Below are positions 6,960 to 63,574 of a DNA stretch of 64,000 bases, one piece after another (position 1 is the stretch's first letter; each line of letters begins with the position of its first letter). Both the position numbers and the translations under genes were made by a program. Location: the IMG/VR virus record IMGVR_UViG_3300025319_000005, positions 1-64,000 of that record; one strand, given 5' to 3'. The notes below the pieces were generated by a model, which did no database searches, was not told where the DNA came from, and saw nothing but the letters and a program-made list of their open reading frames with translations.

Positions 6960-8066
6960 TTAAGACAACACAGATTCAAATACATTCCTATTAGCTTTGA
7001 TAATGGATTTAAGCTCTGATTTTCCACGATGTATTGTTGCTTTTATTGTTCCCAAAGGAATATTAAGCTCTTCTGCGATTTCGTTATAGGATTTCTCTTC
7101 AACAAAACGTTTATTCATAATAATACGGCAATTTTCTCCCAGTTTATTTACCGCCTTATTTATTAAAGATTTTTTTTGCTCTGTAATTAATATTTCTTCT
7201 GGATTAAGTGTTCCATCATCTTTCACATCAAATGAAGAATATTCATCCCCTTCGTTTCTCATTTTCTCAGAAGAAACTCCAGCACTCAAAGAAATTGTTT
7301 CCAATCTTTTTTTACGTGTGTAATCAATTAAAAAATTAGAAGCAATACGGCTTATCCAGCTATTAAACGTAAACGTCGGTTTGTACTGGTGAAGTTTTTC
7401 GAACACTCTAACGAATAACTCTGCAGTTAGGTCATCTGCCAAATCTTTATCAAATTTTAAACTTGAAGTATATTTATAATTTATTATAGCATAATAACGT
7501 TTATATAAAACAGAAAATTTTTCTTTTTTTCCAGATAAAATTTCATTTACAGCGTTAATATCTTCTTGATCTATTTTAGAAAAAACTTTTGTAGCAACAG
7601 AATTTTCTTTCGTTGCGACTTCTTTAATTATTTGTTCAACTTCTGTTACGGTTAAAACTTCCTCTGGTTTAGTTAAAACTTCTTTAAGAACCGGTTTAAC
7701 TTCTTTTTCAGGAGTAACAGTGCTGGATTTTGCAGGTTTAACCAATTTATTGATTTTATAATTTTTTTCTTTAGAAGAAGCAAATGTAACTTCAATCAAT
7801 TTATTTAATGAATTAATTCCTGACTTTAAACAATAACCCAAAAAAACTATGTTTTCTCCACTTAAATTTAAAATATCAACTATTCCAATTCTATCATTCG
7901 ATATTTTTTTAGCACCTGATTTTGATGGGTATGACCAATCTTTCCCTTTTCGCATAGCTTTGGTAAGTGGAAATACTCTTACGTTTAACTTATCATTTTT
8001 TACTTTCCCCATTAAAGAATATAATGGAGCCAATTTGATTGCTGAAATTTTTCCTGTGTTTTTCAT
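6960..8066 (-). CDS. ECF (sigma-70 group 4) RNA polymerase sigma factor with ~160-aa N-terminal extension
   Basis: Region 2 (DLTAELFVRVFEKLHQYKPTFTFNSWISRIASNFLIDYTRKK) and region 4 (KRFVEEKSYNEIAEELNIPLGTIKATIHRGKSELK), SigW/RpoE-like. Confidence 0.9.
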   Translation of the reverse strand: MKNTGKISAIKLAPLYSLMGKVKNDKLNVRVFPLTKAMRKGKDWSYPSKSGAKKISNDRIGIVDILNLSGENIVFLGYCLKSGINSLNKLIEVTFASSKEKNYKINKLVKPAKSSTVTPEKEVKPVLKEVLTKPEEVLTVTEVEQIIKEVATKENSVATKVFSKIDQEDINAVNEILSGKKEKFSVLYKRYYAIINYKYTSSLKFDKDLADDLTAELFVRVFEKLHQYKPTFTFNSWISRIASNFLIDYTRKKRLETISLSAGVSSEKMRNEGDEYSSFDVKDDGTLNPEEILITEQKKSLINKAVNKLGENCRIIMNKRFVEEKSYNEIAEELNIPLGTIKATIHRGKSELKSIIKANRNVFESVLS

Positions 8067-9058: not shown

Positions 9059-9463
9059 TTTAGATTGTTTTGAAGTTTACAATTTATAATTTCTCTTGTT
9101 TCTACATTTTTTTGAACAATTTGTATATGAATTCTTGCGTTATCCTTTCCATTCCATTTAACCTTCAAACCATTTCTTTCAAGTACATCAACAATTTCTT
9201 TACCTTTACCAGACCAAGATAGATAACATCCTTGACTTTCTTTTAAAGAATCTAAATCTTGATTATGATAAAAAATCACTTTATCATATTGTACATCTGG
9301 GACATCTGACCACCCACAAGAATTACAACAAGTATGATTCTCTTTAGCAAAATAACCCAAAGCTCTTAATTCATTAAAAGCATTTTTAATTGGAGCCCGG
9401 AATGAAAATTCTTTTTTTTCTGATTTAACTTTACCTTTTTTAATGATGTATAATTTCTGTTTA

Positions 9464-9500
9464 TAATGTACTATACAAGAAAAAATTGAGAGGTGTTACA
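9464..9500 (-). promoter_or_regulatory. ECF-type phage promoter copy 3
   Basis: TGTAAC-N17-TGTATAGTACATTA. Confidence 0.8.
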
Positions 9501-9518
9501 AATTCACTAATTTTTTAA

Positions 9519-10001
9519 TTATGCTATTGATAATTTGCCATTCATTGTTTTTACTATTTGTTCCAACGGAGATTCTATTTTTTGAATTATAGTATTATTA
9601 ATTAAACTTTGAGATTTTATGTAATCATTCTTTTTATTTTGATAATATATTTTTTGCTTATTATTTAAAATTAATCTTTTTTCTTTAATTTTTTCTCTTT
9701 GTTGTTTTAATACTAATCCACAAACTCCTTTGTATAATAAATTTAATCCACTATTTAAACAATCAAATAATTTTATGTAATATGATTCAGCATCATCCAA
9801 TTTTTCTTTTTCGCAAATATGTATTATTTCAAAAATGTGGTTCTCGTATTTATATTTTTTTAAAGAGTTATATAGTTGCCTTTGACCTTTACAATTATAT
9901 AACTTATAAGCATTCCATCTTTTTTCTATATTTATAGATTTACCTATATAAATTTTTCCGTTTGGTGATGTTATTTTATAGATTCCACAAGTTTGTTTCA
10001 T
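9519..10001 (-). CDS. GIY-YIG endonuclease
   Basis: CGIYKITSPNGKIYIGKSINIEKRW; E..YI..F; start overlaps the recombinase stop (ATGA). Confidence 0.85.
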   Translation of the reverse strand: MKQTCGIYKITSPNGKIYIGKSINIEKRWNAYKLYNCKGQRQLYNSLKKYKYENHIFEIIHICEKEKLDDAESYYIKLFDCLNSGLNLLYKGVCGLVLKQQREKIKEKRLILNNKQKIYYQNKKNDYIKSQSLINNTIIQKIESPLEQIVKTMNGKLSIA

Positions 10002-10855
10002 AAATGAATATTACTAATAGGAGACGCAATTTTACTTATTAAATTATGTGAAATATGAGTGTAAATTGAAGTTGTTTTTACAGAAGAATGACCTAACAAT
10101 TTTTGAATAAGATTTATATCGACACCATTTTCAACCATATGAGTAGCTGATGTGTGTCTCATTAAGTGAGTATAAACTCTTTTGTTATCTATCCCGGCTT
10201 TCTTTGCCAATTGTTTAATTACATTACCAACGCTGTGTTCGGAATATTGTTCAGCATTATTTTGTCCAGTTAAAACATAAACAAACTGGTCTTTTTTTAT
10301 ATTGTACTCTTTGCAATAGTCTTTTAATATTATAATCAATTGTTCATTTAATCCAACTTGACGGTCTTTATTTCCCTTTGCTTGAATTACATTTATAATC
10401 ATTCGGCTCCGGTCAATGTGTTCCCATTTTAAATTTAATAATTCTGAAACCCGGAGGGAACAAGAATAAAGTAGGGCAAGAATCACTTTATGCTTTTTGT
10501 TTTCGCAGGCGTCAAACATTCGTTGGATTTCATTTACAGATAAAACAATCGGCAGTTTTTTGTTTTTCCTTGGACGTTCTATGTATTTGAATTTTTCAAT
10601 TCCGACCCTTGCAATTTTTTCATAATAAATTTTAATAGCTGAATGGTATCCTGAATGTGTTGATGGTTCCTTAAACTGACCAAGAAACTCAATTATCATT
10701 GTGGTATTAATTCTGTCTGGGTGCGTTACCCCTTTCTTTTCAAAATAAGCAAGAAATCCAGTGAAGTTGCTACAATAGTTAGAAACTGAATTTGGCGAGT
10801 AATTTCGGAACTCCATATAATTTCGGAGCTTCTGTACTGGGTCTGAAATTTCCAT
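9998..10855 (-). CDS. Tyrosine recombinase/integrase (XerD-like, N-terminal SAM-like domain)
   Basis: Catalytic R (SLRVSE), K (AKGNKDR), HxxRH (HLMRH), LLGHS and Y (TSIYTH) all intact. Confidence 0.95.
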   Translation of the reverse strand: MEISDPVQKLRNYMEFRNYSPNSVSNYCSNFTGFLAYFEKKGVTHPDRINTTMIIEFLGQFKEPSTHSGYHSAIKIYYEKIARVGIEKFKYIERPRKNKKLPIVLSVNEIQRMFDACENKKHKVILALLYSCSLRVSELLNLKWEHIDRSRMIINVIQAKGNKDRQVGLNEQLIIILKDYCKEYNIKKDQFVYVLTGQNNAEQYSEHSVGNVIKQLAKKAGIDNKRVYTHLMRHTSATHMVENGVDINLIQKLLGHSSVKTTSIYTHISHNLISKIASPISNIHL

Positions 10856-10964: not shown

Positions 10965-11795
10965 TCAAAACAATAAAAGGTTTGGTTTGTACTCATTAAT
11001 TCTGTTTGTCGCTAATTCAAAATATTCCTGTTTCTTTTCCATAATAATATAATTCCGCTTTAAGTTTTTACACACAACTCCAACCGTTCCACTTCCGCCA
11101 AACGGGTCCAACACAACATCGTTTTCATTAGTAAATGTTTTCACAAAAAACTCAACCAACTTTTCGGGGAATACTGCACTATGTTCCATCTTTGAAGTAA
11201 ATTGGTTTGTTACATTATTTGCGTTAATAACATTTGAAGGTCGTGCAAATTCAATGTCCTTAAAATTATCTCTATCCACTACCATTCCGCTTCCGTTGGT
11301 TGGTGTTTTACAATTCTTTCTAAATGCCCTGCTTTTTGTTTCCTCACTTACAGTTGTTCCACAAGCAAGTGCATTAAATGTAATTTGGTTTGGATTGTCT
11401 TTTGTAAAATGATACACAGGCTCAAATCCGTTTTTCATTCTCCCTTTCGTTCCAGTTGGGAAAGCATTTTTTGTCCAACAATATTCTTCCACAAACATAA
11501 ATCCCGTTTCTCTTTTCAGTCGGCAAATCAAATCATAAACATACAGGCTTCGTTCTCCTTTATTGGTGTGTGGCTTTATATTTAAAAAGAAACTTCCAGT
11601 AGGTTTTAAAATCCTTTTTATCTCTGCTCCAATAGGTAAAAACCAATCAATATATTCATTCTCGTTTGTACCTTCGTATGTTGCCTTTCTGCGTTCAGCA
11701 TAAGGCGGTGATGTAAAAACCAAATCAATACTATTAGTATCAATGGTTTTCATCAATTCTAAACAATCTCCTAAATAAACTTTATTGCTTTCCAT
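10965..11795 (-). CDS. N4-cytosine/N6-adenine DNA methyltransferase (beta class)
   Basis: FTSPPY catalytic motif, H.AVFP, VLDPFGGSGT SAM motif. Confidence 0.92.
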   Translation of the reverse strand: MESNKVYLGDCLELMKTIDTNSIDLVFTSPPYAERRKATYEGTNENEYIDWFLPIGAEIKRILKPTGSFFLNIKPHTNKGERSLYVYDLICRLKRETGFMFVEEYCWTKNAFPTGTKGRMKNGFEPVYHFTKDNPNQITFNALACGTTVSEETKSRAFRKNCKTPTNGSGMVVDRDNFKDIEFARPSNVINANNVTNQFTSKMEHSAVFPEKLVEFFVKTFTNENDVVLDPFGGSGTVGVVCKNLKRNYIIMEKKQEYFELATNRINEYKPNLLLF

Positions 11796-12140
11796 TAATC
11801 AACCGATATTGAAAGTATGCCCTTTCTTCCGTGTTTCACAAGTTCTTCTCCATCTTCATAAGCAACGGATAAGTGATGATTTTCATCAAGTATTTCTTCC
11901 TTATCAAAATCAATTATTCCATCAGGCAATTCATAAATATCATCTTCTTTGATAATATCTAACTGTTCCTGAGTTAATGGTTCTTTCAATTCGTAACGAA
12001 CCTTTACTGTTTTTGTAACATCAATGTAATTTTTCATATTATATTTATTTTATAGTTATTAATAAAAAGCCAACACACGCCACCTTTTTTTAAAATTAAA
12101 CAACAAACAACTGCCCCTCGCTCGAAAACCCTACGCACCA

Positions 12141-12221
12141 ACATAACACAGGCTACACGCAATAGCCCCACAAGCCCTCACACATCCAAAGCTACTGCAA
12201 GTGTAGCCCCGTCCGTTAGTT
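12141..12221 (-). mobile_element. attC-like hairpin 1
   Basis: - strand AACTAAC...GTTATGT ends; GCTACAC/GTGTAGC and GCA(A)TAGC/GCTA(C)TGC arms. Confidence 0.7.
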
Positions 12222-12288
12222 GCTATTTGTTTTCTTAAAATTAAAAGGCTCACGCTCGCTTAATTTTTTGCAAAAATTTAAAAGGTTA

Positions 12289-12819
12289 CTAACCTCCACT
12301 CATTGGTGTTGTATCAACTGAATAAAATCTCGGATAAGGTGATGTGTTCAAATCTAGCATGAACTTTAAATCAACTAATTTGTCTGGCAAAGTGGAAGGT
12401 ATAATTAAATAAAATTTCCATTTATCTTCTTCATTTATACTTCCTCGTTGCAAAAATAACTCACGTAAATTCCCAATATTTATAAATTGTATTTCTGTAA
12501 TAATTAACTTTTGGTCAATTTCTATTTTAAATTTTGTTTTAAATTTTGTATTCTTTATGTTTTTTTGAACACATACAAATTCCAAATTTTGACAATCTGG
12601 CTGAGAAAGGTCTATAAATTCATTCTCAGCAACTACTTTATCTTCCCACCTTTTAGGACGATTAATGCACTCTATTGTGTAATAGTCGTTATCAGCACCT
12701 ATTATTCTTTTCAATTGTGCAATCGTTATAATTGGCTTCACAAAGTAATTATTTCCATCAATTTTTATTCTAATATCCATAGTATCTTTTCCATCCTTTA
12801 ATTTGTTTATAATTATCAA
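12289..12819 (-). CDS. Tandem multi-ubiquitin (Ubl beta-grasp) domain protein ending in Gly-Gly
   Basis: Two repeats of I.ID...ITxAQL...D..V...E.IDLS.P..F / FKIEID...LREL...PDKLV..DL...RFYS; C-terminus SGG. Confidence 0.7.
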   Translation of the reverse strand: MIIINKLKDGKDTMDIRIKIDGNNYFVKPIITIAQLKRIIGADNDYYTIECINRPKRWEDKVVAENEFIDLSQPDCQNLEFVCVQKNIKNTKFKTKFKIEIDQKLIITEIQFINIGNLRELFLQRGSINEEDKWKFYLIIPSTLPDKLVDLKFMLDLNTSPYPRFYSVDTTPMSGG

Positions 12820-13006
12820 TGTAGTGAAATCCGTTATCTCGTTTTTTCACTAACTGTTTTTTTTCGTTTCCATTTTCATAAATAGCTATAAACTCAAACC
12901 CTTCATCGTTCGGTAAATAACTAACTGGATAAAATTTGCTAACACACGCCATCTCTTTTTGTTTATTTATTTTTTACTGCCTCACGCTCGAAGGGCTTAC
13001 GCACCA

Positions 13007-13084
13007 ACCTAACACCATGTTGGTCGTAAGTTTGCAACGTACTAACCGCTTAGGCAAACCTACGCCAACATTTGTACGTTGTAC
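13007..13084 (-). mobile_element. attC-like hairpin 2
   Basis: - strand GTACAAC...GTTAGGT (perfect GTTRRRY); ATGTTGG(T)CGTAAGTTTGC pairs with GCAAACCTACGCCAACAT, one extrahelical base. Confidence 0.75.
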
Positions 13085-13735
13085 GCAAGGTTTAAAAATA
13101 AAGGATCACGCACTTCTTAAAGTTTTTCAAACTTTTAAGAGATTTTAATCCGTTTACGTTTTGTTTCCCAATCTTTCTCTCCAATTATTTTAGCCGATTT
13201 ATAAATTCGGTTTTCTTTGTCAGCGCAAACATACATTCTGCAATGTGGTTTATCCGAATAATGCCCCTTTACAGCCATCACAGGAAAGTATTGCGTTTCT
13301 TCCATTACAACAACGTGATACATATATTGTTTTCGTTTTCCAATCATAAAATGAAACACTTTTAATAAATCACCAATCAATATCTGTTTACCAGTTTGGT
13401 CGTAGTACGTATTATCTTTCAACTTTTCTAAATATTCTTTCATAATTAGTTCCATTTAAAAGGGTTTGTATAATCAATCTCTTTCCAAAAACCAACAACG
13501 CCAAACATCACAATACCTACTATTATTATCAAAACAATAGTAATGTAACTAAGTGGATTATATGGATTAAATCTTCTTGCTGTTGAATATCCTTTACCTA
13601 AGTGAGGTGTTCTTTTTTTATTTGATACTTCCTGTAGAATGAAAAGGAATTTTAATATATTTTTCATAATTTGTTTTAAAATGTAAGTACTATGTTTTCT
13701 GCCTCCACACGCCACCATTTATTTTTAAACCCAGC

Positions 13736-14383: not shown

Positions 14384-15561
14384 CTCTCATGCAAACAAGA
14401 GGGAAATAATTAGTATTAATATTATACCCAGTATCTTTACCATCTTCAAAAATAATTTGACCGGTTTCAATTTCTCCATTTGTACCATACGCCATTCCGT
14501 CAGAATCAAAGCCAGCTGGATATATTTGTCCACTTTCATCGTATACGCCTTTAACTAAATCAACAAATCCGTTTTTATACAGGATTTTCCCATTTTCAGA
14601 TAATAATCTGACCAATTTTTTCTTACTGTTATCTATTTTCGTAGCCATAATGTTAATTTTTCACAAATGTAGAAAAAAAGTAGAAATTGTATATTTTTTC
14701 TTTAAAAAGTTATTAACAATTATTCATCATCTTTAATTCCATCAAGTCTTTCTCCTGTATTATCCCAATATGGAGCCGTTGTAGAGTCATAAAAACCAAC
14801 ATATTCTGAATCTATACAATAATCCACTGTTTCAAGTAGAATTTTTTTCATTTGCTCAGTAGATAGTGTTTCAATCCATTTTTTTAATCTTTCTGTCCGA
14901 TTCATTTTTATTGAGATTTGTTGATTAGTTAATGATTATAGCTAATTGTATTATAAGCTGCATCAATCGCAAGTCCTTGTTCAATCCAACCATTGACATC
15001 TATGTGTAAAAGTGTTAGAAAGTCAATTATTTCAGCATCTAATTGAATACTATCGAATAATGTACGCTTGATATTTTCTTTAGGCCAAAGTTTGTTTAGT
15101 TGCTCTATTTCGTTTCTGGATAAACTGTCAAATTTTCTCAATATTAACTTGACTAAACTTGGGTTATAGTTTATTTTATTGATGACAACCACATTTAGTT
15201 TAATATCAATACCTTCAATAATTGAAAAGTCTGAGTTACCTTTAATATGGCAGGAACATCCAATAAAGAACCTGAAATCAATTGCACTTAATGTGGTTTT
15301 CATGTTGTTAAGCGTCTAATTCTTTGTCGGCTTGCAGTAATTTTTCTCCAAGAGCATTTTTATCAAGCTCCTTATTTAATAATGAAGTAGTGTAACATCC
15401 AGCAGAACAATATCCTAGATAAAAAGGATTTCCTTCTCCATATACACGTTTTACTTCTTTTGCTGAGTGGATTTTACCACATTCTTGGTTTTTACATACT
15501 CTTTTGTCTGTATCTACTTTTGATTTTTTCATGATGTTTTAATTTAATGTTAAATTTCTTA

Positions 15562-15598
15562 TAATGCACTATACAAGAAAAAAATGAGAGGTGTTACA
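15562..15598 (-). promoter_or_regulatory. ECF-type phage promoter copy 4
   Basis: TGTAAC-N17-TGTATAGTGCATTA. Confidence 0.8.
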
Positions 15599-15605
15599 GA
15601 TTCAA

Positions 15606-16343
15606 TTATCTTTTATTAATTACAATAATCACAGATGCAGTGTTTGTTCCACTTTCTTTAAATTCACCTTCAGGCAATTCCTGTATTTCTGCACCAACTT
15701 CTTTGAGCCAATTTTGAAAGTTCACTTCTTTTTTGTTGGTTGATATTTGAGAATGCTTTGAAGCAATGGTTACAATTCTTCCTTCATCTTTCAGACAATC
15801 CCACATTTTCATAATGTGCTGGATATCTTGGTTTTTATTAAAAGGAGGATTTGCAACTATTTTATCGAATTTTTTCGTGCAAGTTAAAAAATCTTCACCA
15901 AGCAAAACAAAATTTTTTATATCTTTTAGAACTTTTTGATTTTCAGGCATTAATTCATAGCCAAAAACTTTTTTATCGTTACCCAAAACTCTTTGAATGG
16001 ATTTTATTATTGAACCTTGTCCGGCTTCTGGTTCGCAAATTTCATCATCTTTTTGTACATCTGCCAATTCAACAAGTCTATCAGCCAAACCTGCAGGTGT
16101 AGCATAAAATTGAAACTCTTTTTTGATATTGCGTTTTTCTCCGCCGGCAATTTGAGTAAGTAACTCAGTTGGGTCTTCGTTGAAGGTGAAACCCTGGATT
16201 TTGCCACCTGTCCATTTTCCTCCAATCAAATTAAGTGATTTCGCAACATCCATGTAAAGTTTGCGGTCAAGAGGAATAGAAGGTAGTTTTACTATTTTTC
16301 CTTCTACTGTGCACTTTTGTAGTATTTGTTCTTTCGTTTCCAT
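15606..16343 (-). CDS. N6-adenine DNA methyltransferase-like protein
   Basis: FQFYATP, EPEAGQG SAM motif, IVANPPF. Confidence 0.85.
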   Translation of the reverse strand: METKEQILQKCTVEGKIVKLPSIPLDRKLYMDVAKSLNLIGGKWTGGKIQGFTFNEDPTELLTQIAGGEKRNIKKEFQFYATPAGLADRLVELADVQKDDEICEPEAGQGSIIKSIQRVLGNDKKVFGYELMPENQKVLKDIKNFVLLGEDFLTCTKKFDKIVANPPFNKNQDIQHIMKMWDCLKDEGRIVTIASKHSQISTNKKEVNFQNWLKEVGAEIQELPEGEFKESGTNTASVIIVINKR

Positions 16344-16363
16344 TATATATTTTGTTTTGGTTA

Positions 16364-16400
16364 TAATGTACTATACAAAAAATAATTGAGAGGTGTTACA
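16364..16400 (-). promoter_or_regulatory. ECF-type phage promoter copy 5
   Basis: Consensus match upstream of 16343. Confidence 0.8.
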
Positions 16401-16412
16401 AGTAAAGCGTAA

Positions 16413-25955: not shown

Positions 25956-26944
25956 TTATCTATAATATCGTAATGCGTGTGCGGCAAATAAAAATTGATT
26001 CCCTTCTTTATCTTCAATTCCACATATTAATTCTCCTGTAATATCATGAAGAGATCTTGAAAAAACTTCAAATTCCAACAATTTTCTATCTACATATTCT
26101 CCATATAAACCATAAGTAAAATAGTGTCTTTTTGTTGGTTCTCTAAACTCCATTTCATGAAATTTAACATTATAAGTTGAATAATGAAATCCAGAATTTG
26201 TAATATTTACAACATCTCCTATGTTTATCAATGTATATTTCTCTACGAGAACCCGGCGTGTTAATTTGTTTTTTTCAACAATTTCCATGCTATTCAATAT
26301 AACTTAATGCGCTTTGGTTAAATAAAAATTGATTTCCTTCTTCATCTTCAATTCCGCACAATAATATATCCTCTCTTTGAAATCCAAGTATATTACTGTG
26401 AAATTCAGATTTAGAAAAAATTTTAAATTCTTTTTTTTTAAAAAATTTGGGTGAAATTCTACCTTGTATTTCACAGTTTTTAAACATCATTTCTTTGAAT
26501 TTTTGTGTATAACTCGCATATCTCTCACCTGGATATTTAACTTTCACTATAGTGCCAATTCCCATAAATTCAAATTTTTCTACGAGAACCCTGCGTGTTA
26601 ATTTTGTCTTTTCAACAATTTCCATATTATTAAATATAACTTAACCCAGTTTGACCAAACAAAAACTGATTCCCTTCCTCATCTTCAATTCCGCAAATTA
26701 ACTCTCCGTTTCTATGGTTAGTAGATTTGGAAAAAATTTCAAATTCTTTATCATAAAAAATTAGTGACGAATAATTTAATCTTGATGCAATCGATTTAAA
26801 ACCCATTTCTATAAATTTAACACGATAATTTGAATAATGCATTCCAGAATGTACAACTTTTACGACAGCTCCAATCCCCATAAATTCAAATTTCTCTATG
26901 AGAACCCGGCGTGTTAATATGGTTTTCTCCTTATCATTCACCAT
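25956..26944 (-). CDS. Three tandem paralogs (25956-26297, 26290-26625, 26630-26944) with N-terminal LTRRVLxEK tag
   Basis: Shared IG..V.V..SG..YS.Y..KF.EM.F and LICGIEDxEGNQFLF. Confidence 0.85.
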
Positions 26945-28661: not shown

Positions 28662-29087
28662 TCACTTAAAGTATATTTTTTTTGCCACTTTACCAAATGA
28701 TTTTTGTACTATACAAGATGTATAATCAGATATCAAGCCAACTTCTAATTCATCTAAATAAATACCGAATAGTAAACAAACATTTTCAACTTTAAAATTT
28801 TTATTAATAAGATTTTTTATAAAAGTTTGTATCTGCATATTTGATATTAAATATTTTTCTTTAAACATAAGCCATACTAAATTATATCTAACTCTAAAAA
28901 TATTTGGGACACATTCATATGTAAATAATATTTTATCATTTTTCAAATAAAAAATAGAGCCTGGATATGAATCTAATATTTTAATATCACATCCATCAAG
29001 AATTGAAAGAAAAAAATATTCTATTTCATTCTGAATAGAATATTTTTCAAACAATACTTTCCTAGTTATATGTAATTCTATTTTCAA
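28662..29087 (-). CDS. Family A paralog, no intact array
   Basis: MKIELHITRKVLFEK...FFLSILDGCDIK...YPGSIFY. Confidence 0.8.
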   Translation of the reverse strand: MKIELHITRKVLFEKYSIQNEIEYFFLSILDGCDIKILDSYPGSIFYLKNDKILFTYECVPNIFRVRYNLVWLMFKEKYLISNMQIQTFIKNLINKNFKVENVCLLFGIYLDELEVGLISDYTSCIVQKSFGKVAKKIYFK

Positions 29088-29089
29088 TA

Positions 29090-31084
29090 TTAAATGCCAC
29101 TTAAATTTTTAAATTTTGTTATCTCTGCCCAGTTATTTTCATCTAAATAATACTTTAAAGCTCTATTTTCCGTGTATTTTTCAACCAACACTCTACGGGT
29201 TTCTTTTCTCATTTGCTCTTTAAGACGTTGAGTATTATAGAATTCCTCATCTTTTCGCCAATATCCATATACACAGTAATCACAAGCACATTCATCATAT
29301 CGTTCTTTTGTACATGAAATAGCACTTATGCCATAACGTTTACCTTTTTTCATTTTATGAATTCCAAGGAAGCATAAAATCCTTCCTATTATTTGCAATA
29401 ATCTATTCATCATTTTTCGTAAATGTAACGTTTTCATCAACTATGTAATGAATTCTCAATAACTTCCCATCATCATGCACTGTATTAATACGTTTTAATG
29501 ATTTAACACGATTTTGCTGAAAAACATCAGAATAATCAGATATGTCGTATTTTTCTGGTTTTGATTTTTCTACCAACACTTTCCGGCGCTCTTTATTTAT
29601 TCTTGATTGGAATTTCATTAGATTATATCCATCTTCATCAGGAACCCATTCTGTATAATTAAACTTACCGCGAATACATACATCGTATCTATTATGTTTT
29701 GACCACGCGACACCTTTAAGCTTTTTGTGATAACCAAAAAAACATAAAATTTTGTTATACAAATATACTATTTTTTTCATTATATTTCTTAAATTTCGTA
29801 ATGATTCCAAGCTCTATTAATTCCGATTTTTCTTGCAAAACGCCTACTACTTTCTCTTGCTATTTCTTTAAAATCACCATTTATATGTTTGACACTTCGA
29901 CATTCATTATGCATCTTCTCAAATAATACCCGGCGAGTTTCATCTAAAGTCTGTATTTTAAATAACCAAAGTTTATATCCTTTATTGTCTTCTTTATAGC
30001 GAGAATAGGTACAGTTTTTACATACGTCATATCTCATTTCAGCACACCAAGAAATTCCTTTAATCATGTTATGGATACCATGATAACATAAAAACTTGTT
30101 CCAAAATTTATTAAACCGGCTTTTCATAATCCAATTAAAAATATTCTATTCTATTTGCTGTTTCTTTAAAGGATATTGCTCCAATAGATTTCATCGCTTC
30201 TTTATATTCCAAAAAAGATTTAATATCATCTTTCATTTTAGGAGCCTTTTCAAACAACACTCGTCTTTTCTCTTGAAATAATTTAAGCCTAAATTTTATT
30301 AATTTTGAATGTTCTAAATCAAGAACCCAATAACTAAATTTACAACCCTTACGCTTACAAGCATCATATCTCATATCGTTTGACCAGGTTATACCCTTTA
30401 CAATGTCGTGCTTTTCATAATGACATAAAATCATATAATATAAACTCTTGCCCCAAAGAAATATTTTAAAAAGTAGTTTTATCATGTTTTTTAATGATAA
30501 TCAATTTCCCAATCAGGTTCTTTAAATTTTTCAATTAAAACCTTTCTTGTTTCACGCTGTATTTGTTCTTGGTAAAGTATTAAATTATGCCCTTTAATAT
30601 CTAATTTCCAGAACGTTTTACCACATTTTATACATAAATCCTGTCTGGAGTGAATATACCAATAACAACCTTTCTGTATCTTATGAATACCAAAGAAACA
30701 TAAAATATTTTTTATGTTTAATCTATATAAAAAATTGATTCTCATATTTAAAATTTACCAACATATTTCCCATTCAGAACTTTCATTTAAACCTTGCATT
30801 TTTCTTACTTTTCTTAATATTATATCCTCGTTAATTTGTTTTACAAAAACACTTAATGAATTATCGGTTTTTTCAATTAACACTTTCCTGGTTTGCCTTT
30901 GTGCATTCACACTATACCAAAAAACCTCATATCCATCTTTATCAAATACGTATACCGGCATACCACAATGCTTACACATATCTTTTCTTTGAAATTCGCT
31001 ATTCCAAATATAACCTTTTTTAATATTATGTATGTTGAACCAATAGCACTTAATCCAAAGAAAAATATTTCGAATACGTTTCAT
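29090..31084 (-). CDS. Six tandem Cys/His-rich paralogs (LCFxGxH type) with the tag after the domain
   Basis: 29090, 29403, 29789, 30135, 30491 and 30755 share LC(F/Y)xGxH..KG..W...R.D.C..C followed by (T/R)R(K/R)VLxEK; a seventh, diverged copy at 32801-33184. Confidence 0.8.
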
Positions 31085-31092
31085 TATATGTT

Positions 31093-31605
31093 TTATATGT
31101 CAAATACAATATTTTCTGGAAAATCTTTTTCTATTAGAGTGTGCAATCCTAAATAATTATACTCTTCCCATTCTGATTGAGCCAATTTTGCACAAGGTGT
31201 ATATTCTTTTAATCTACAATTCTGAAATTCTTTTTCCAATGTTGAATTCGATTCAGTTAAACTTTCATCAAGTCCCTTCCAGCCAATATAAGGCATGTAA
31301 TTATTCAAATTAATGTAGTTATATATTATACTTTTTATAAACTCTTGAATTTCTTTATGAGCCATTTGATACTCTTTTTCAAAAACAAACCAGATCATTT
31401 TATACCTTACATAAAAATTCTTGGTTGCTGTTCCTTGTTGAAAAAATATAAAACCATCCTTTATATAAAAAATATTACCCGGATACATATCAGAAACTTT
31501 AAGCTCACATCCATCCAAAAAAGAAAGAAAAAACCCTTCCATATCACTTTTAATGGAAAACTTCTCCGTAAGGACTTTCCTGGTTATAATTAATTCTACT
31601 TTCAT
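31093..31605 (-). CDS. Family A paralog with eroded repeat remnants in the C-terminal tail
   Basis: INLNNYMP and RLKEYTP remnants of LETHxKLEGYTP. Confidence 0.75.
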   Translation of the reverse strand: MKVELIITRKVLTEKFSIKSDMEGFFLSFLDGCELKVSDMYPGNIFYIKDGFIFFQQGTATKNFYVRYKMIWFVFEKEYQMAHKEIQEFIKSIIYNYINLNNYMPYIGWKGLDESLTESNSTLEKEFQNCRLKEYTPCAKLAQSEWEEYNYLGLHTLIEKDFPENIVFDI

Positions 31606-31624
31606 ATATTTTTAATAAAAATGT

Positions 31625-31921
31625 GGTGTATAGCCTCTAATTTTATATATGTTTCCAACTTACCGCCTTTTTTACCTACAACAGCGTTTGGTGTATAGCC
31701 CTCTAATTTTATATGTGTTTCCAATTGCCACACAATAAGCACCTCATCAACTTGGGTGTATAGCCCTCTAATTTTATATGTGTTTCCAATCAGAAAGGGT
31801 TTTACTTTTTTGTGTAATGGGTGTATAGCCCTCTAATTTTATATGTGTTTCCAATTTAAAAAGGTGTACGGAATCACCAAAGCATGGTGTATAGCCCTCT
31901 AATTTTATATGTGTTTCCAAT
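31625..31921 (-). CRISPR. CRISPR-like array A: 5 repeats, 4 spacers, fused to the 3' end of gene 31774-32199
   Basis: Repeat ATTGGAAACACATATAAAATTAGAGGGCTATACACC at 31886, 31820, 31755, 31690 (identical) and 31625 (35 nt, degenerate); unique spacers of 30, 29, 29, 30 nt. Confidence 0.7.
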
Positions 31922-32199
31922 ATATCCTTTATAAACAATTGTGTTTCAGCATAGTTAAGCTCATATTTACTTTCAAAAACTGACCAAATCAAGTCATATT
32001 TAACCCAGAAATACCTATTTTTTAATTCCTGCTGAAATAAAATTAAGTCATTTTTTACATAAAAAACAAAATCCTGATACTTGTCTGAAATTTTAATTTC
32101 ACATCCCTCAAGAAAAGAAAGAAAAAATACATTCATTTCGTGTTTGATGTTAAATTTTTCAAACAACACTTTTCTTGTTATAATTAGTTCTATTTTCAT
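31774..32199 (-). CDS. Family A paralog reading into array A
   Basis: Ends ...LETHIKLEGYTP-CFGDSVHLFK-LETHIKLEGYTP-ITQKSKTLSDWKHI*. Confidence 0.85.
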   Translation of the reverse strand: MKIELIITRKVLFEKFNIKHEMNVFFLSFLEGCEIKISDKYQDFVFYVKNDLILFQQELKNRYFWVKYDLIWSVFESKYELNYAETQLFIKDILETHIKLEGYTPCFGDSVHLFKLETHIKLEGYTPITQKSKTLSDWKHI

Positions 32200-32217
32200 A
32201 TATTTTTAACAGAATGT

Positions 32218-32520
32218 GGTGTATAGCCATCATCTAATTTTATATGCGTTTCCGGCTCGTTTTTGGTGTCATAAAAATAAAAATCAGGTGTATAGCCCTC
32301 TATTTTCACATGTGTTTCCAGCCCGTAAGCGTTATTTTTTGTATAAGCTGAAGGTATATAGCCCTCCAACTTTACATGTGTTTCCAATCAATTGCTATTT
32401 CTTTTATAAACATCAAACGGTATATAACCATCTGACTTTACGTGTGTTTCCAATTTTGTTGTGACGGCTAAGAGAGCAGCTGAAGGTGTGTAGTCTTCTA
32501 ATTTCACATGTGTTTCCAAC
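32218..32520 (-). CRISPR. CRISPR-like array B: 5 diverged repeats, four 30-nt spacers, at the 3' end of gene 32388-32819
   Basis: Repeats at 32485, 32419, 32353, 32287 (36 nt) and 32218 (39 nt, in-frame 3-nt insertion); translate as xETHxK(L/S/I)(E/D)(G/D)Y(T/I)P. Confidence 0.55.
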
Positions 32521-32819
32521 CTATCTTTTATAAAAGATTGAATATCATTATGGTTAAATTTGTATTTCATTTCAAAAACTGACCAAATTAAGTCATACCT
32601 TACATAAAAATGCCTATTTTTTATTTGCTGTTCGAATAAAATCAAGTCATTTTTTACATAAAAAATTGAATATATATATTTTTTACTTAATTTTATTTCA
32701 CATTCATCCACAAAAGAAAGAAAAAAATCTTCCATTTCGTGTTTTATGTTGAATTTCTCAAAAATAACTTTTCTGGTGATTATTAATTCTACTTTCATTT
32801 TTATCTTACCTTTTGACAA
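32388..32819 (-). CDS. Family A paralog reading into array B
   Basis: Stops at a TGA formed at the spacer2/repeat3 junction; track ORF 32196-32387 is the in-frame remainder of the array. Confidence 0.85.
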   Translation of the reverse strand: MSKGKIKMKVELIITRKVIFEKFNIKHEMEDFFLSFVDECEIKLSKKYIYSIFYVKNDLILFEQQIKNRHFYVRYDLIWSVFEMKYKFNHNDIQSFIKDRLETHVKLEDYTPSAALLAVTTKLETHVKSDGYIPFDVYKRNSN

Positions 32820-33152
32820 TACCTTTCATCATCAGCAAATTTTTCAATTAAAACAACCCTTTTTTCTAAACTGATTTTATAAACCTTTTTTAAATGCAAA
32901 ATTCTCTGCAACGTTTCTTTACTTATTGGATTATAAGAGCTAACATGAAAAGAATCGCAATTTTGGCAATCGTAATAACTACATATATCACCTAATGAAT
33001 CATTGTCCCAATTTATCGTGTAACCTTCTAATCCTGAATTTTCAGATTCTTCCTCCAGCCCATAGTTATTTTTAATATACACATGCCGGTTAAAGATATG
33101 ACATTTTATCCACTGTAGAATTTTTTGAGCTTTAGATTTCATTTGTTGTTTT

Positions 33153-33311
33153 TTACCAAAAATTCCATTCATGACCTTTAACAATCCAATTAGGCATAGG
33201 AATGTATTTCTCTATAAGCACTTTTCTTGTATTTTCTGCTATAATTTTTATCTTTTTAGTTGCTTCAATTTCTTTTATTGAGCTATAAAATGGTGAACAT
33301 TTTCTTAACAT
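33153..33311 (-). CDS. 52-aa tagged microprotein (below track cutoff)
   Basis: MLRKCSPFYSSIKEIEATKKIKIIAENTRKVLIEKYIPMPNWIVKGHEWNFW*. Confidence 0.75.
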   Translation of the reverse strand: MLRKCSPFYSSIKEIEATKKIKIIAENTRKVLIEKYIPMPNWIVKGHEWNFW

Positions 33312-33332
33312 AGTTTTTTTAATTAGATGAAG

Positions 33333-33509
33333 TTAATTTATATACTTTTCTATTAACACTGTTCTGGTGTTCTCTTTTATAATTTTATTTCTTTCTATAA
33401 ATTCCATAATAAGTCTTTTCTTGAGCCTAAACTCTTCTATGCGTTTCAAAGAGGCTTCTTTGTTTGATTTTCTAAAATCTAACGAATTATAATATGAATT
33501 TTTTCCCAT
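33333..33509 (-). CDS. 58-aa tagged microprotein (below track cutoff)
   Basis: MGKNSYYNSLDFRK...IIKENTRTVLIEKYIN*. Confidence 0.75.
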   Translation of the reverse strand: MGKNSYYNSLDFRKSNKEASLKRIEEFRLKKRLIMEFIERNKIIKENTRTVLIEKYIN

Positions 33510-33524
33510 TGGATTTCTTATTTT

Positions 33525-33671
33525 TTAACTTTGCATTTTTTCTACCAGAACTTTACGAGTATTCTCTTCTAAAAATTCTTCTCTTAGTTTATTCTTTTTC
33601 CATTTGTATATCTCCGACCTCTTTTGAGCTGCATATTTCTGTTTATCAGGATTATAATTTCTTTGTTTCAT
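33525..33671 (-). CDS. 48-aa tagged microprotein (below track cutoff)
   Basis: MKQRNYNPDKQK...EFLEENTRKVLVEKMQS*. Confidence 0.75.
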   Translation of the reverse strand: MKQRNYNPDKQKYAAQKRSEIYKWKKNKLREEFLEENTRKVLVEKMQS

Positions 33672-33682
33672 TTATTTTCTTT

Positions 33683-33844
33683 TTAAAAATAAATTGAAAT
33701 CAATTTCCATTTTTCTATTAGGACTTTACGTGTGTTCTCTTCTATAAATTTTCTCTGAGCATGCCTTTCTTTAGCAATTTTTCTATAATATTCAATATAT
33801 TCATCAAAAGAAATATCAGAAGCGGTTTTAATTCCAGTTTTCAT
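33683..33844 (-). CDS. 53-aa tagged microprotein (below track cutoff)
   Basis: MKTGIKTASDISF...KFIEENTRKVLIEKWKLISIYF*. Confidence 0.75.
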   Translation of the reverse strand: MKTGIKTASDISFDEYIEYYRKIAKERHAQRKFIEENTRKVLIEKWKLISIYF

Positions 33845-34705
33845 ATAAATTTAATGTAATTTTTTTTTAATTTAAATTTTTCTATTAAAACCGTTCTCGT
33901 ATTCTCTTCTATGAATTTTTTCTGCTTTTCCTCTGCTTCTTTTTCAAATCTACACTTTTTTAACCATAAATAAGCTTCATCAGCTCTGGTTCTTCGTATC
34001 TGAGCATCGCTTTTTTCATTAGTGAACATGGTTGTAAAATATGCTATTTTTGGCTCTTCCATTTTTCTATAAGGACTTTACGTGTATTTTGAATTTTGTA
34101 CCAGGCTTTCTCATTTGGATAAATTGGAACCCATTCTAATATTTCTCCTTTAAATCTCAAATTCAATTCTCTTTCAGCTACACCCATAAGAAATAAAAAC
34201 TTATTTGTCAATTCTAATAATACAGGTTCATCAATTTCATCATCCCAACGAATAAACTCATAGTGCTTCTTACTAGTTTCAAATATGTACCGGTGATACC
34301 AATAAATATTTGACCAATGTTGTTGTGTTACCTGAGAAAATGGAATTTTAACCCCATCTTTAGTTGTCCAAACTTCCTCAAATACTCCAGCCTCAGTTTC
34401 TTCTAAAAACGGCTTATATTCGAATATCGTCTTTAAATTGTTTTCAACTTTTTCCATGACTTAATTCATTGTTATATCACTATACGAGAAATAATTGATA
34501 CGTGTTACAACTTTATTGGTATTCGACACAATTTTAGCAATTTTTGACTCAAATATGTTTTTTCTATTAAAACCCTCCTAATGTATATTATATCTGGCAC
34601 AGTCATCATTGCCCGACCGTACTTAATAATATCAAATGCCTCTTCTTCGCTTATTCTAAAACGAGCCAGCATCTCTTTTATCTCAAAATCATATAGATAC
34701 CTCAT
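33841..34705 (-). CDS. Three small proteins with C-terminal tag (33841-34062, 34044-34457, 34505-34705)
   Basis: EENTRTVLIEK, IQNTRKVLIEK, YIRRVLIEK. Confidence 0.75.
34473..34509 (-). promoter_or_regulatory. ECF-type phage promoter copy 14 (variant)
   Basis: TGTAAC-N17-CGTATAGTGATATA; the TAA of TGTAAC is the stop of ORF 34505-34705. Confidence 0.7.
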
Positions 34706-35210
34706 TTTTCTTTGAAAGTTCTTTAAATGATGTTGTAGCTAAATTTAAGCTAGAAGGATGATATTCACCTAAACTTTTAAATTCTATTATTTCTTTAGCA
34801 AGTATAAATGAACCTCTTACCGGCATACAATCATTTTTTATTTCATTTTCCAATATCATCCAATCTTTAGAATTCTTAATAGAACCCATTGAATATGGTG
34901 AATAACCATTAAGTTTTATACTGTTCTTTAGTAAACCTTTTATAAGTATTTGTGTTTTAGCATAGCTAAACCCAAATTTCATTTTAAAAACTGACCATAT
35001 GATGTCATATCTGACATAAAAAAACTTATATTTAATTTGTTGATGAAATAAAATCATATCTTCTTTTACATAAAAATAAAGCTCCGGATATTCTTTACTC
35101 GTTTTAATTTCACATCCTTCGATAAAAGACAGAAAAAACTCTTTTGCACCTTCTGTAGAAGAATATTTCTCGGTTAGGACTTTTCTCGTTATGACTAATT
35201 CTATTTTCAT
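34689..35210 (-). CDS. Family A paralog with a fossil 22-aa-period tail
   Basis: LKNSIKLNGYSP...ILENEIKNDCMP-10aa-IIEFKSLGEYHP-10aa. Confidence 0.75.
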   Translation of the reverse strand: MKIELVITRKVLTEKYSSTEGAKEFFLSFIEGCEIKTSKEYPELYFYVKEDMILFHQQIKYKFFYVRYDIIWSVFKMKFGFSYAKTQILIKGLLKNSIKLNGYSPYSMGSIKNSKDWMILENEIKNDCMPVRGSFILAKEIIEFKSLGEYHPSSLNLATTSFKELSKKNEVSI

Positions 35211-63555: not shown

Positions 63556-63574
63556 GATATTTTGTTTTTGTTTA

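What the first reader, a model, noticed from the sequence alone, without database searches (positions are those of the whole stretch)
12289..12819. Phage-borne tandem ubiquitin-like protein with a free C-terminal Gly-Gly, with no E1/E2/JAB genes in the window
Seen: two multi-ubiquitin-like repeats ending ...TTPMSGG*, carried as a cassette between attC-like sites. Established: bacterial Ubl conjugation defence systems (Bil-type and related E1/E2/DUB operons) use Ubls with a C-terminal Gly that are attached to phage proteins. Inference: a decoy or dominant-negative Ubl that jams host conjugation defence, or a captured defence fragment.
Basis: partly seen in the sequence, partly recalled or inferred. 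Interest (0 to 1): 0.68.

Follow-up and report, generated by a model that had tools for sequence, protein, structure and literature searches.

The report
Orphan ubiquitin-like protein in a phage
A large soil/groundwater phage carries a stand-alone, two-domain ubiquitin-like protein with a ready-to-use Gly-Gly end that lines up end to end with the modifier protein of bacterial "Bub" conjugation operons. The phage has none of the enzymes needed to attach it, so it is a testable candidate for a viral mimic of a bacterial ubiquitin-like system.

Summary
The core observation holds. Window 12289-12780(-) encodes a 163-aa protein (P0001) with two beta-grasp domains, a flexible tail and a free C-terminal GG. 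Domain 1 is a clear Multi_ubiq (PF14452) homolog. Domain 2 is only weakly so by sequence.

The whole protein aligns with a 158-aa two-repeat Ubl that ends in a free Gly. That Ubl sits in a complete Bub operon (Prok-E2_E, JAB-ThiF, BubE).

The GG domain is under purifying selection (dN/dS 0.21-0.27). All three known orthologs keep GG, with synonymous Gly-codon changes.

No ThiF, JAB, E2 or BubE gene was found in the 212.6-kb virus record (81% complete) or beside any relative. The family is very rare: 11 true hits among 1.84 billion representatives. It turns up in otherwise unrelated phages.

The flanking "attC-like" sites are real. They are two copies of a phage intergenic element: a variable hairpin followed by a conserved 34-nt box. 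They fail the integron tests.

A decoy or hijack of host Bub/Bil machinery is the best-supported reading (about 0.4), but it is untested and the host is unknown.

The parts
12289..12780 (-). Gene for the 163-aa tandem ubiquitin-like protein P0001 (ATG start at 12780; an in-frame TTG at 12819 would add 13 aa; stop TAG at 12289-12291)
   Evidence: The sequence is identical in contigs of independent runs X2 and X11 across the inter-domain linker.
12562..12774 (-). Beta-grasp domain 1 (residues 3-73), a Multi_ubiq-type repeat
   Evidence: Pfam Multi_ubiq E 0.075 over residues 4-61. Homologs of this domain hit PF14452 (7 of 12 members, best 4e-26). hhalign to Bacteroidota Multi_ubiq proteins gives E 2.5e-5, probability 75%. 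Model pLDDT above 90.
12535..12561 (-). Inter-domain linker (residues 74-82, low pLDDT)
   Evidence: pLDDT below 50 for residues 76-79. Domain-1 relatives end here as the C-terminus of separate proteins. The stand-alone domain-2 ortholog P0005 begins just after this point.
12313..12534 (-). Beta-grasp domain 2 (residues 83-156), the GG-bearing domain
   Evidence: VIA Z 7.7, rmsd 2.7 A over 75 residues to Citrobacter BubA(155-229) in complex with BubCD. hhalign to the Multi_ubiq repeat gives E 1.5e-3. dN/dS 0.21-0.27. Alone with 3 sequences it folds at only pLDDT 50.
12292..12312 (-). Flexible C-terminal tail TTPMSGG with a free Gly-Gly
   Evidence: T-P-M-x-G-G is invariant in all three orthologs. 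The Gly codons are GGA GGT in the window and L002 and GGT GGA in L001. G162 aligns with the terminal Gly of the Bub-operon Ubl P0123.
12770..12952 (-). 60-aa ORF immediately upstream, overlapping the Ubl start by 11 nt (possibly co-translated). No known family.
   Evidence: The 63-aa ORF in the same position in L002 is unrelated by eye.
12100..12288 (-). Downstream GC-rich element B: an AT-rich hairpin, CTAAC, a long variable hairpin, then the conserved box GTGTTATGTTGGTGCGTAGGG..TTCGAGCGAGGGGCAGTT (box at about 12109-12150)
   Evidence: fold z -3.2; z -5.9. The first 84 nt after the stop fall within the only nucleotide-level match to L002 (87.6% over 323 nt) and read as nearly identical to it.
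12975..13134 (-). Upstream GC-rich element A: the same layout with a different hairpin sequence (conserved box at about 12980-13015)
9998..10855 (-). Context: Xer-like tyrosine recombinase, 1.4 kb downstream on the same strand
   Evidence: Pfam Phage_integrase 4.9e-39. NCBIfam best hit XerA_Arch at 194.9 bits, under the 220 cut-off. Integron integrase TIGR02249 at 165.8 bits, under the 265 cut-off.
10965..11795 (-). Context: N6/N4 DNA methyltransferase between the Ubl gene and the recombinase
   Evidence: Pfam N6_N4_Mtase 4.5e-44. Homologs lie near copies of the hairpin element in L013 and L016.

Best explanation
P0001 is an orphan, phage-encoded counterpart of the ubiquitin-like modifier (BubA/BilA, Multi_ubiq type) of bacterial Bub/Bil conjugation operons. 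It has two beta-grasp domains and is made directly in the mature form, with a flexible tail ending in free Gly-Gly.

The phage encodes no E1, E2 or peptidase. The most likely mode of action is therefore that the protein engages the host's own Bub/Bil-type E1-E2 machinery as a substrate mimic. The tail would enter the E1 adenylation site, and the protein would then do one of two things. It could compete with or titrate the host Ubl (decoy or dominant negative), or it could be conjugated in place of the host Ubl (hijack). Either would blunt a conjugation-based response to infection.

Shown: the fold, the homology of domain 1, collinearity with a genuine Bub-operon Ubl, a conserved and selected GG, the absence of conjugation enzymes in the record, and spread among unrelated phages.

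Inferred: every step involving the host enzymes.
For: Fold and family:
- AF2 model at pLDDT 88.
- Best PDB matches are solved bacterial multi-ubiquitin proteins (Foldseek E 2e-8; VIA Z 9.2-9.9).
- Domain 2 superposes on BubA(155-229), the domain bound by BubCD, at Z 7.7.
- ESM Atlas neighbours are Multi_ubiq and Multi_ubiq + Prok-E2_E clusters.

Collinearity with a real Bub Ubl:
- P0001 residues 3-162 align with residues 18-158 of P0123 (pairwise E 2e-5), with terminal Gly on terminal Gly.
- P0123 lies in the operon Multi_ubiq, Prok-E2_E, JAB-ThiF, BubE, surrounded by TIR-, Mrr_cat-, SocA_Panacea- and ArdC-domain genes.

Selection:
- dN/dS is 0.21-0.27 over 84 codons.
- GG is kept in all three orthologs with synonymous codon changes.
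- The GG domain is the part retained when domain 1 is truncated (P0003) or absent (P0005).

Orphan status:
- No ThiF over cut-off, and no Prok-JAB, JAB, Prok-E2_A, Prok-E2_B, UQ_con or DUF6527/BubE in 212.6 kb.
- None beside the relatives either.

Setting:
- The gene sits among small early-type genes, DNA methyltransferases and a phage sigma factor.
- The nearest named cellular Multi_ubiq proteins come from soil Bacteroidota. The phage is found in soil, sediment and groundwater metagenomes.

Literature:
- Bil conjugates its Ubl to phage tail proteins (10.1101/2023.09.04.556158).
- Bub conjugates through a C-terminal Gly and is inferred to be antiphage (10.1101/2024.11.21.623953).
Against: - No host is known and no interaction has been shown.
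- Domain 2's sequence link to Multi_ubiq is weak. Its confident model depends on two distant alignment rows.
- The phage clade also contains GG-less forms. Domain-1 relatives end in ..KCVRK on varied N-terminal domains, and P0013 is a tandem form without GG. At least part of the clade therefore works without conjugation.
- In the commonest Bacteroidota Ubls (..SHVRDG-SSS), the reactive terminal domain is a different subtype from a Multi_ubiq repeat. An E1 of that type may not accept P0001.
- The record is only 81% complete.
- Identity to any cellular Ubl is low (about 22%).
Confidence: 0.4

Rival explanations
1. Conjugation-independent beta-grasp adaptor or inhibitor. The protein binds a host or phage partner non-covalently, for example a host Ubl filament, a peptidase, an E2 or an unrelated target. 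The GG tail would then be only a binding epitope, or incidental.
For: Domain-1 relatives occur as the C-terminal module of proteins with several unrelated N-terminal domains and no terminal Gly. P0013 is a tandem form without GG. Bacterial multi-ubiquitin proteins self-assemble into filaments (PDB 9d59 and 9d5b; 10.1101/2024.11.21.623966), so co-assembly is conceivable.
Against: T-P-M-x-G-G followed directly by a stop is invariant at dS 0.67-0.93, with synonymous changes in both Gly codons. The tail length matches that of a Bub-operon Ubl exactly. That pattern is typical of E1 substrates.
Confidence: 0.25
2. Part of a phage-encoded conjugation system. The E1/E2 would lie in the missing ~19% of the genome or be too divergent to detect. 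The system would be used for phage purposes, such as superinfection exclusion or virion modification.
For: CheckV completeness is 81% and the gene lies 12 kb from the record's left end. Many ORFs have no family assignment.
Against: Known Ubl genes sit next to their E1/E2. Here the neighbours are unrelated, and no relative's neighbourhood holds such enzymes. Seven family searches of the whole record found nothing over threshold. The one weak ThiF-like stretch (11 bits) lies in an ORF with no Pfam match.
Confidence: 0.1
3. Sulfur-carrier-type beta-grasp protein (ThiS/MoaD/TtuB-like). Its GG end would be activated by the host ThiF/MoeB for thiocarboxylate chemistry, for example nucleic-acid or cofactor thiolation.
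For: A GG-terminated beta-grasp is the hallmark of ThiS/MoaD. ThiS-family clusters appear among the Atlas structural neighbours at TM 0.34-0.40. ThiF/MoeB is nearly universal in bacteria (controls).
Against: There is no ThiS or MoaD Pfam hit even at E 10. The sequence and profile links go to Multi_ubiq. A tandem architecture is not known to me for sulfur carriers (own knowledge). No sulfurtransferase or thiolation gene is adjacent.
Confidence: 0.05
4. Functionless passenger: a fragment of a defence operon captured by recombination and carried along by the flanking mobile elements.
For: The family is very rare and patchy, with mosaic boundaries: truncated in L002, single-domain in L001, fused here. 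Recombinogenic-looking repeats flank it.
Against: dN/dS is 0.21-0.27. The ORFs are intact in three divergent phages. The sequence is identical across contigs of the independent runs that were laid (X2, X11), and 20 runs from 16 studies hold the stretch.
Confidence: 0.05

Closest known systems
BubA / type II BilA: Multi_ubiq (PF14452) ubiquitin-like modifiers of bacterial Bub and Bil operons (e.g. P0123 in locus L038; Citrobacter BubA, PDB 9d59/9ea8)
   Same: Tandem beta-grasp domains of the Multi_ubiq type. A flexible tail ends in a reactive-position Gly, with the same number of residues (10) after the last-strand F-Y as in P0123. Best structural and profile matches.
   Different: Encoded by a phage, and alone. 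There is no E2 (Prok-E2_E), no JAB-E1 and no BubE next to it or anywhere in the record. Identity is only about 22%. It scores below the Pfam gathering threshold. It is made already mature (GG then stop), whereas many cellular forms carry an overhang or an E2 fusion that a peptidase removes.
ISG15 and linear di-ubiquitin (eukaryotic two-domain Ubls)
   Same: Two beta-grasp domains in tandem with a C-terminal GG. Foldseek E about 1e-4 and VIA Z 6.6-7.3.
   Different: Lower scores than the bacterial multi-ubiquitin proteins, and no detectable sequence relationship.
Virus-encoded ubiquitins of eukaryotic viruses (giant-virus and baculovirus ubiquitin genes, BVDV ubiquitin insertions)
   Same: A virus carrying a copy of the host-type modifier without the full enzyme set. 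These are the only significant matches in the viral structure library. The idea that viral ubiquitin interferes with host ubiquitination comes from my own knowledge and was not checked here.
   Different: Those are close copies of eukaryotic ubiquitin. This one is a very divergent bacterial-type Ubl in a bacteriophage. No phage match in BFVD was significant (best phage row E 0.019).
Integron attC sites and T4-type PeSL 'mobile regulatory cassettes' (PMC2839356, PMC4122927): comparison for the flanking elements only
   Same: Short conserved boxes bracket a hairpin whose structure is kept while its sequence varies (CTAAC ... GTTAT/GTTAG). Two copies flank a small accessory gene pair in a variable region. 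The elements lie at the 3' ends of genes in the sense orientation.
   Different: There is no IntI-type integrase and no intI-attI geometry. A 34-nt box that is highly conserved among the phage copies lies outside the hairpin. No promoter was demonstrated, so PeSL membership is also untested.

Membership tests
Bacterial Multi_ubiq-type Ubl (BubA / type II BilA) | [quoted passage not shown] | tested here: met
   AF2 at pLDDT 88 shows two beta-grasp domains. Foldseek E 2e-8 and VIA Z 9.2-9.9 to solved multi-ubiquitin proteins. Caveat: domain 2 folded alone with 3 sequences reaches only pLDDT 50.
Bacterial Multi_ubiq-type Ubl (BubA / type II BilA) | Sequence match to PF14452 at or above the gathering score | tested here: not met
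   P0001 scores 13.7 bits against a 24.5 cut-off, E 0.075. Indirect support comes from 7 of 12 relatives matching, hhalign E 2.5e-5 for domain 1 and 1.5e-3 for domain 2, and BLASTP E 2e-5 to P0123 over the full length.
Bacterial Multi_ubiq-type Ubl (BubA / type II BilA) | Conserved C-terminal glycine, exposed or followed by a short removable overhang | tested here: met
   The protein ends ..TPMSGG then stop. GG is invariant in the 3 orthologs with synonymous codon changes. It aligns with the terminal Gly of P0123.
Bacterial Multi_ubiq-type Ubl (BubA / type II BilA) | Encoded in an operon with E1 (ThiF), E2 (Prok-E2 / UBC) and a peptidase (JAB or BubE/DUF6527) | tested here: not met
   None found in the 212.6-kb record or next to relatives. 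The cellular comparators do have them.
Bacterial Multi_ubiq-type Ubl (BubA / type II BilA) | ATP-dependent activation and conjugation through the C-terminal Gly | not testable with these tools
   This needs biochemistry. The single complex prediction gave no answer.
Integron gene cassette (attC + IntI) | IntI-type integrase (integron-integrase model over cut-off, IntI-specific insertion) | tested here: not met
   TIGR02249 scores 165.8 bits against a 265 cut-off, in two stretches. The best model is Xer-type. The protein is 285 aa.
Integron gene cassette (attC + IntI) | attC layout: R''(RYYYAAC)-L''...L'-R'(GTTRRRY) imperfect hairpin | tested here: inconclusive
   CTAAC/ACAAC ... GTTATGT/GTTAGGT boxes surround a variable hairpin. 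Each box departs from the consensus, which I recalled from memory. An extra conserved 34-nt box follows, which I do not know from integron attC sites (own knowledge).
Integron gene cassette (attC + IntI) | Divergent intI next to attI and a cassette array; excised or empty forms exist | tested here: not met
   The recombinase is on the same strand, 1.2 kb downstream of element B, with a methylase between. There are only two elements in the genome. No joints were seen in 4 runs (weak evidence from contigs only).
ThiS/MoaD sulfur carriers | ThiS/MoaD family sequence match and linkage to ThiF/MoeB or sulfur-transfer genes | tested here: not met
   No such Pfam hit at E up to 10. No ThiF in the genome.
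PeSL-type mobile regulatory cassettes of T4-like phages | Composite early promoter plus stem-loop terminator motif flanking accessory ORFs | tested here: inconclusive
   The stem-loops and the flanking arrangement are present. No promoter is evident in the element. The genome's own repeated promoter motif is a different sequence.

The most novel reading that the evidence does not exclude
P0001 is a viral counter-measure against a bacterial ubiquitin-like conjugation system. It would be a pre-matured BubA/BilA mimic that the host E1/E2 charges, or that traps them, and so disables Ubl conjugation during infection. That a phage keeps such a mimic would itself be genetic evidence that Bub-type operons act against phages.
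Probability: 0.3. Interest if true: 0.8.

Novelty: new variant of a known kind. Interest (0 to 1): 0.6.

Why it matters
Bacterial ubiquitin-like conjugation (Bil, Bub) is a recently recognised branch of antiphage immunity. For Bub, the targets and the biological role were still open in the literature read here. Five literature searches, only some of them aimed at this question, turned up no phage counter-measure against these systems.

A phage gene that copies the modifier but not the enzymes gives a concrete reagent. It can be used to test whether such systems can be jammed or hijacked, to probe E1 specificity, and to ask whether Bub operons really face phages. It also shows that Multi_ubiq domains circulate among unrelated phages as exchangeable modules.

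Tried and rejected
- PHROGs, PADLOC and NCBIfam gave nothing for P0001.
- Megablast of the locus against isolated phages found no match.
- The word-based protein search found only 3 hits.
- Scans of IMG/VR with P0001, A5 and A4 found a single other viral contig, carrying a domain-1 relative.
- Scans of 185,579 species genomes with A4 and A5 found no relative.
- ESM Atlas feature searches gave no usable hit.
- Complex prediction of domain 2 with the E1 of the L010 operon returned 'no answer'. It is not evidence either way.
- AF2 on domain 2 with only its three orthologs gave a low-confidence model, so it was not used for fold searches.
- Phage-only profiles against PDB sequences were not significant: E 0.12 for domain 1 and no relevant hit for domain 2. 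The E 2e-8 of profile A3 partly reflects the cellular rows in that alignment.
- The two domains are not detectably similar to each other in sequence, so this is not a recent duplication.
- Rfam (E up to 1) and ARAGORN found nothing in or around the flanking elements.
- The sigma-70 promoter and terminator scans were at chance level.
- Host inference by tblastn of two large ORFs failed. One ORF is TnpB-like and the other had no match.
- No RNA runs hold the locus, so expression could not be assessed.
- The weak ThiF-like stretch at 132190-132360 was rejected as an E1. It scores 11 bits, contains a stop, and its ORF has no Pfam match.

Full report
**What is at the coordinates.**
The window is the first 64 kb of a 212,632-bp IMG/VR virus record (CheckV 81% complete, about 29% GC, genes mostly on the minus strand). 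The ORF 12289..12819(-) is real.

The in-frame ATG at 12780 is the more plausible start. It overlaps the stop of the upstream 60-aa ORF by 11 nt, and it coincides with where homologous domains begin. It gives the 163-aa protein P0001, which ends ...RFYSVDTTPMSGG followed by a stop.

Contigs from independent soil and groundwater runs cover the gene, including the inter-domain linker, without a single difference. The two-domain reading frame is therefore not an assembly artefact.

**Fold and family.**
Family libraries alone leave the protein almost unannotated. There is a sub-threshold Multi_ubiq hit (13.7 bits, E 0.075) over residues 4-61 and nothing in PHROGs, PADLOC or NCBIfam.

An exhaustive phmmer search of 1.84 billion cluster representatives returned 12 proteins, one of them a spurious repeat protein. 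Seven of the 12 aligned members (the query plus its 11 true relatives) match PF14452, the best at 4e-26.

An AF2 model built on that alignment is confident (pLDDT 88.3). It shows two beta-grasp domains (residues 3-73 and 83-156), a disordered linker and a low-confidence 7-residue tail.
- Foldseek ranks the solved bacterial multi-ubiquitin proteins first (9cd2, 9d5a, 9d59, 9d5b, 8u38; E 2e-8 to 1e-6). Linear di-ubiquitin and ISG15 follow.
- VIA-align gives Z 9.2-9.9 across both domains for the same five entries. That is clearly above di-ubiquitin and ISG15 (6.6-7.3).
- VIA-align superposes domain 2 on BubA(155-229), the E1-bound terminal domain of Citrobacter BubA, at Z 7.7 and rmsd 2.7 A.
- ESM Atlas neighbours are Multi_ubiq clusters, including Multi_ubiq + Prok-E2_E fusions.

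**How solid each domain is.**
Domain 1 is a Multi_ubiq repeat by sequence as well as fold. The evidence is hhalign E 2.5e-5 (probability 75%) to an alignment of Bacteroidota Multi_ubiq proteins, and hmmsearch E 2.8e-14 (single-target scale) to the Bub-type protein P0014.

Domain 2 is weaker.
- The phage-only profile finds no multi-ubiquitin entry in PDB sequences.
- hhalign to the Multi_ubiq repeat gives E 1.5e-3 at 16% probability, although it covers the whole domain and shares the same motif positions.
- AF2 with only the three phage orthologs reproduces the beta-beta-alpha-beta-beta-beta order, but at pLDDT 50.
- The two domains are not similar to each other in sequence.

'Two multi-ubiquitin-like repeats' is therefore right for the architecture, firm for domain 1 and probable for domain 2.

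**The best cellular counterpart.**
Relatives of P0014 are numerous, and where they carry names they come from Bacteroidota: Mucilaginibacter, Pedobacter, Spirosoma, Flavobacterium and Chitinophagaceae. Most end in ..SHVRDG-SSS after a distinct terminal domain.

One of them, P0123 (158 aa), has exactly two Multi_ubiq repeats and ends in a free Gly ten residues after the last-strand F-Y, just as P0001 does. BLASTP aligns P0001 residues 3-162 with P0123 residues 18-158, terminal Gly on terminal Gly (22% identity, pairwise E 2e-5).

P0123 is the first gene of a complete Bub operon: Multi_ubiq, Prok-E2_E, JAB-ThiF, BubE/DUF6527. The operon sits among TIR, Mrr_cat, SocA_Panacea and ArdC genes. P0014 likewise precedes a small ORF and a ThiF E1.

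[quoted passage not shown] It also says they are activated through a conserved C-terminal Gly, which a JAB peptidase sometimes exposes (10.1101/2024.11.21.623953; 10.1101/2023.09.04.556158).

**Is the GG meaningful?**
Domain 2 has three orthologs: the window protein, P0003 (127 aa, with a truncated and decayed domain 1) and P0005 (83 aa, domain 2 alone). All end T-P-M-[ST]-G-G followed by a stop.

Pairwise dN/dS over the 84 codons is 0.21-0.27, at dS 0.67-0.93. The two Gly codons are GGA GGT in the window and L002, but GGT GGA in L001. So the GG-bearing domain is the conserved core, and the GG is selected.

Against this, domain-1 relatives (P0004, P0006, P0007, P0009, P0010, P0012) are C-terminal modules on unrelated N-terminal domains, and none of them carries a terminal Gly. 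P0013 is a tandem form without GG. Part of this phage clade evidently works without C-terminal conjugation.

**Orphan status.**
Searches of the whole record found no hit over threshold for ThiF, and none at all for Prok-JAB, JAB, Prok-E2_A, Prok-E2_B, UQ_con or DUF6527/BubE. The control genomes rang for ThiF and JAB. The only sub-threshold ThiF-like stretch (11 bits) lies in an ORF with no Pfam match.

There is no paralog of the Ubl in the genome. Neighbours in the window are two DNA methyltransferases, a Xer-like recombinase, a GIY-YIG protein, a sigma-70-family protein, a ligase-domain protein and many small unknown ORFs. No neighbourhood of any relative contains conjugation enzymes. The 19% of the genome that may be missing remains a caveat.

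**Distribution.**
The phages that carry relatives are otherwise unrelated to this one. Only the Ubl module is shared at 72-81% amino-acid identity.

At the nucleotide level, the window and L002 share only 12205-12524, which is domain 2 plus 84 nt downstream. No relative was found in the 185,579 species genomes with the pattern-based scan, and only one other IMG/VR contig has one. The module is rare, restricted to phages as far as these searches reach, and horizontally exchanged.

In L006-L008 and L012 the domain-1 gene sits directly upstream of a Xer-like recombinase that is 35% identical to the window's. The meaning of this linkage is open.

**The 'attC-like' sites.**
Two GC-rich elements flank the ORF60 + Ubl pair, at about 12100-12288 and 12975-13134. 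They are the only two copies in the genome.

Read on the coding strand, they share four features in order:
- an AT-rich palindrome;
- a CTAAC/ACAAC box;
- a long hairpin whose sequence differs between copies while the pairing is kept;
- a conserved box, GTGTTA(T/G)GTTGGTGCGTA..TTCGAGCG..GGCAGT.

The folds have z-scores of -2.7 to -5.9.

Pattern scans found about ten further distinct copies in AT-rich phage contigs. Each lies 3' of a different gene in the sense orientation. Each has its own hairpin, and two have none. No recombinase lies in those stretches, although a related methylase is nearby in two of them.

The window's recombinase scores best as Xer-type and falls below the integron-integrase cut-off. 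It also lies on the same strand, downstream. Laying contigs of four runs showed no excised or empty form. They did show variant elements in other contexts. Rfam has no match.

I therefore regard these as a phage intergenic element family of unknown role. It could be a terminator or RNA-stability element and/or a recombination hotspot, comparable in idea to T4-type PeSL cassettes (PMC2839356, PMC4122927). I do not regard them as integron attC sites.

**Mechanism and verdict.**
The most economical reading is that P0001 acts on, or through, a host Bub/Bil-type E1-E2 as a substrate mimic, either as a decoy or dominant negative or as a hijacked modifier. It rests on four points:
- the protein is a pre-matured BubA-like Ubl;
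- its GG is under selection;
- the phage lacks the enzymes;
- the gene lies in an early, accessory region next to methyltransferases that plausibly counter restriction (my inference, not tested).

I put this reading at about 0.4. The rivals are:
- a conjugation-independent beta-grasp binder (0.25);
- an undetected phage-encoded enzyme set (0.1);
- a sulfur-carrier role (0.05);
- a functionless passenger (0.05).

Nothing here demonstrates an interaction. The single complex prediction was uninformative and no RNA data exist.

In five searches of the literature library, only some of them aimed at this question, I saw no phage-encoded Ubl mimic or anti-Bil/Bub factor described. That is not proof of novelty. 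I rate it a new variant of a known kind, with interest 0.6.

Noticed in passing
window, 23 copies, e.g. 9434-9501, 15532-15599, 16334-16401, 63545-63612 (motif read on the - strand): A highly conserved promoter-like motif of about 42 nt (TTGTAACACC, about 17 nt, TTGTATAGTACATTATAA) precedes minus-strand gene blocks. A sigma-70-family protein is encoded at 6960-8066(-). The Ubl gene lies in the roughly 6-kb block between the copies at 15568-15597 and 9470-9499.
   Followed up: partly
window 12100-12288 and 12975-13134; also L013:250-385, L014:5590-5660, L016, L019, L025, L029, L032, L033, L034: A family of phage intergenic elements: a variable hairpin between CTAAC and GTTAT boxes, followed by a conserved 34-nt box. 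Each copy lies 3' of a different gene. There is no Rfam match and the function is unknown.
   Followed up: partly
L006:5001-6325, L007, L008, L012; window 9998-10855: In another phage lineage, a gene for 'unknown N-domain + Multi_ubiq domain' (P0004) sits directly upstream of a Xer-like tyrosine recombinase that is 35% identical to the window's. The window's recombinase is followed by a GIY-YIG protein (9519-10001). The link between the Ubl domain and the recombinase is unexplained.
   Followed up: partly
window 28923-35766 and 44129-44580: Arrays of paralogous genes share 164-300-nt repeats and runs of 65-66-nt periodic repeats (31617-31920, 32280-32519, 35249-35488, 44129-44302). Further small paralog families lie at 25985-26929, 33180-33924 and 36787-38659.
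   Followed up: no
L046 (G000:C1:116690-118426, outside the window): A 578-aa ORF whose phage matches include stretches annotated as IS200/IS605 TnpB or transposase in Campylobacter phages, along with unannotated matches in Lak megaphages. A GC-rich island at 116814-116986 overlaps its 3' part and could be an associated guide RNA.
   Followed up: no
L042 and L043 (G000:C1:134354-136561 and 162462-164573, outside the window): Two large paralogous proteins (735 and 703 aa) each carry a PcfJ-like domain.
   Followed up: no
L038:6001-8624 and its flanks: A complete split Bub operon (Multi_ubiq Ubl with a free terminal Gly, Prok-E2_E, JAB-ThiF, BubE) sits between SocA_Panacea/ArdC genes and TIR-TPR/Mrr_cat genes. 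It would be a suitable test system for P0001.
   Followed up: partly
P0125, P0132, P0114, P0048, P0067 and relatives: The named proteins in this set come from Bacteroidota. These Multi_ubiq proteins end almost invariably in ..KGCEQFFSHVRDG-SSS. That is a conserved Gly with a 3-residue overhang on a terminal domain that differs from the Multi_ubiq repeat.
   Followed up: partly
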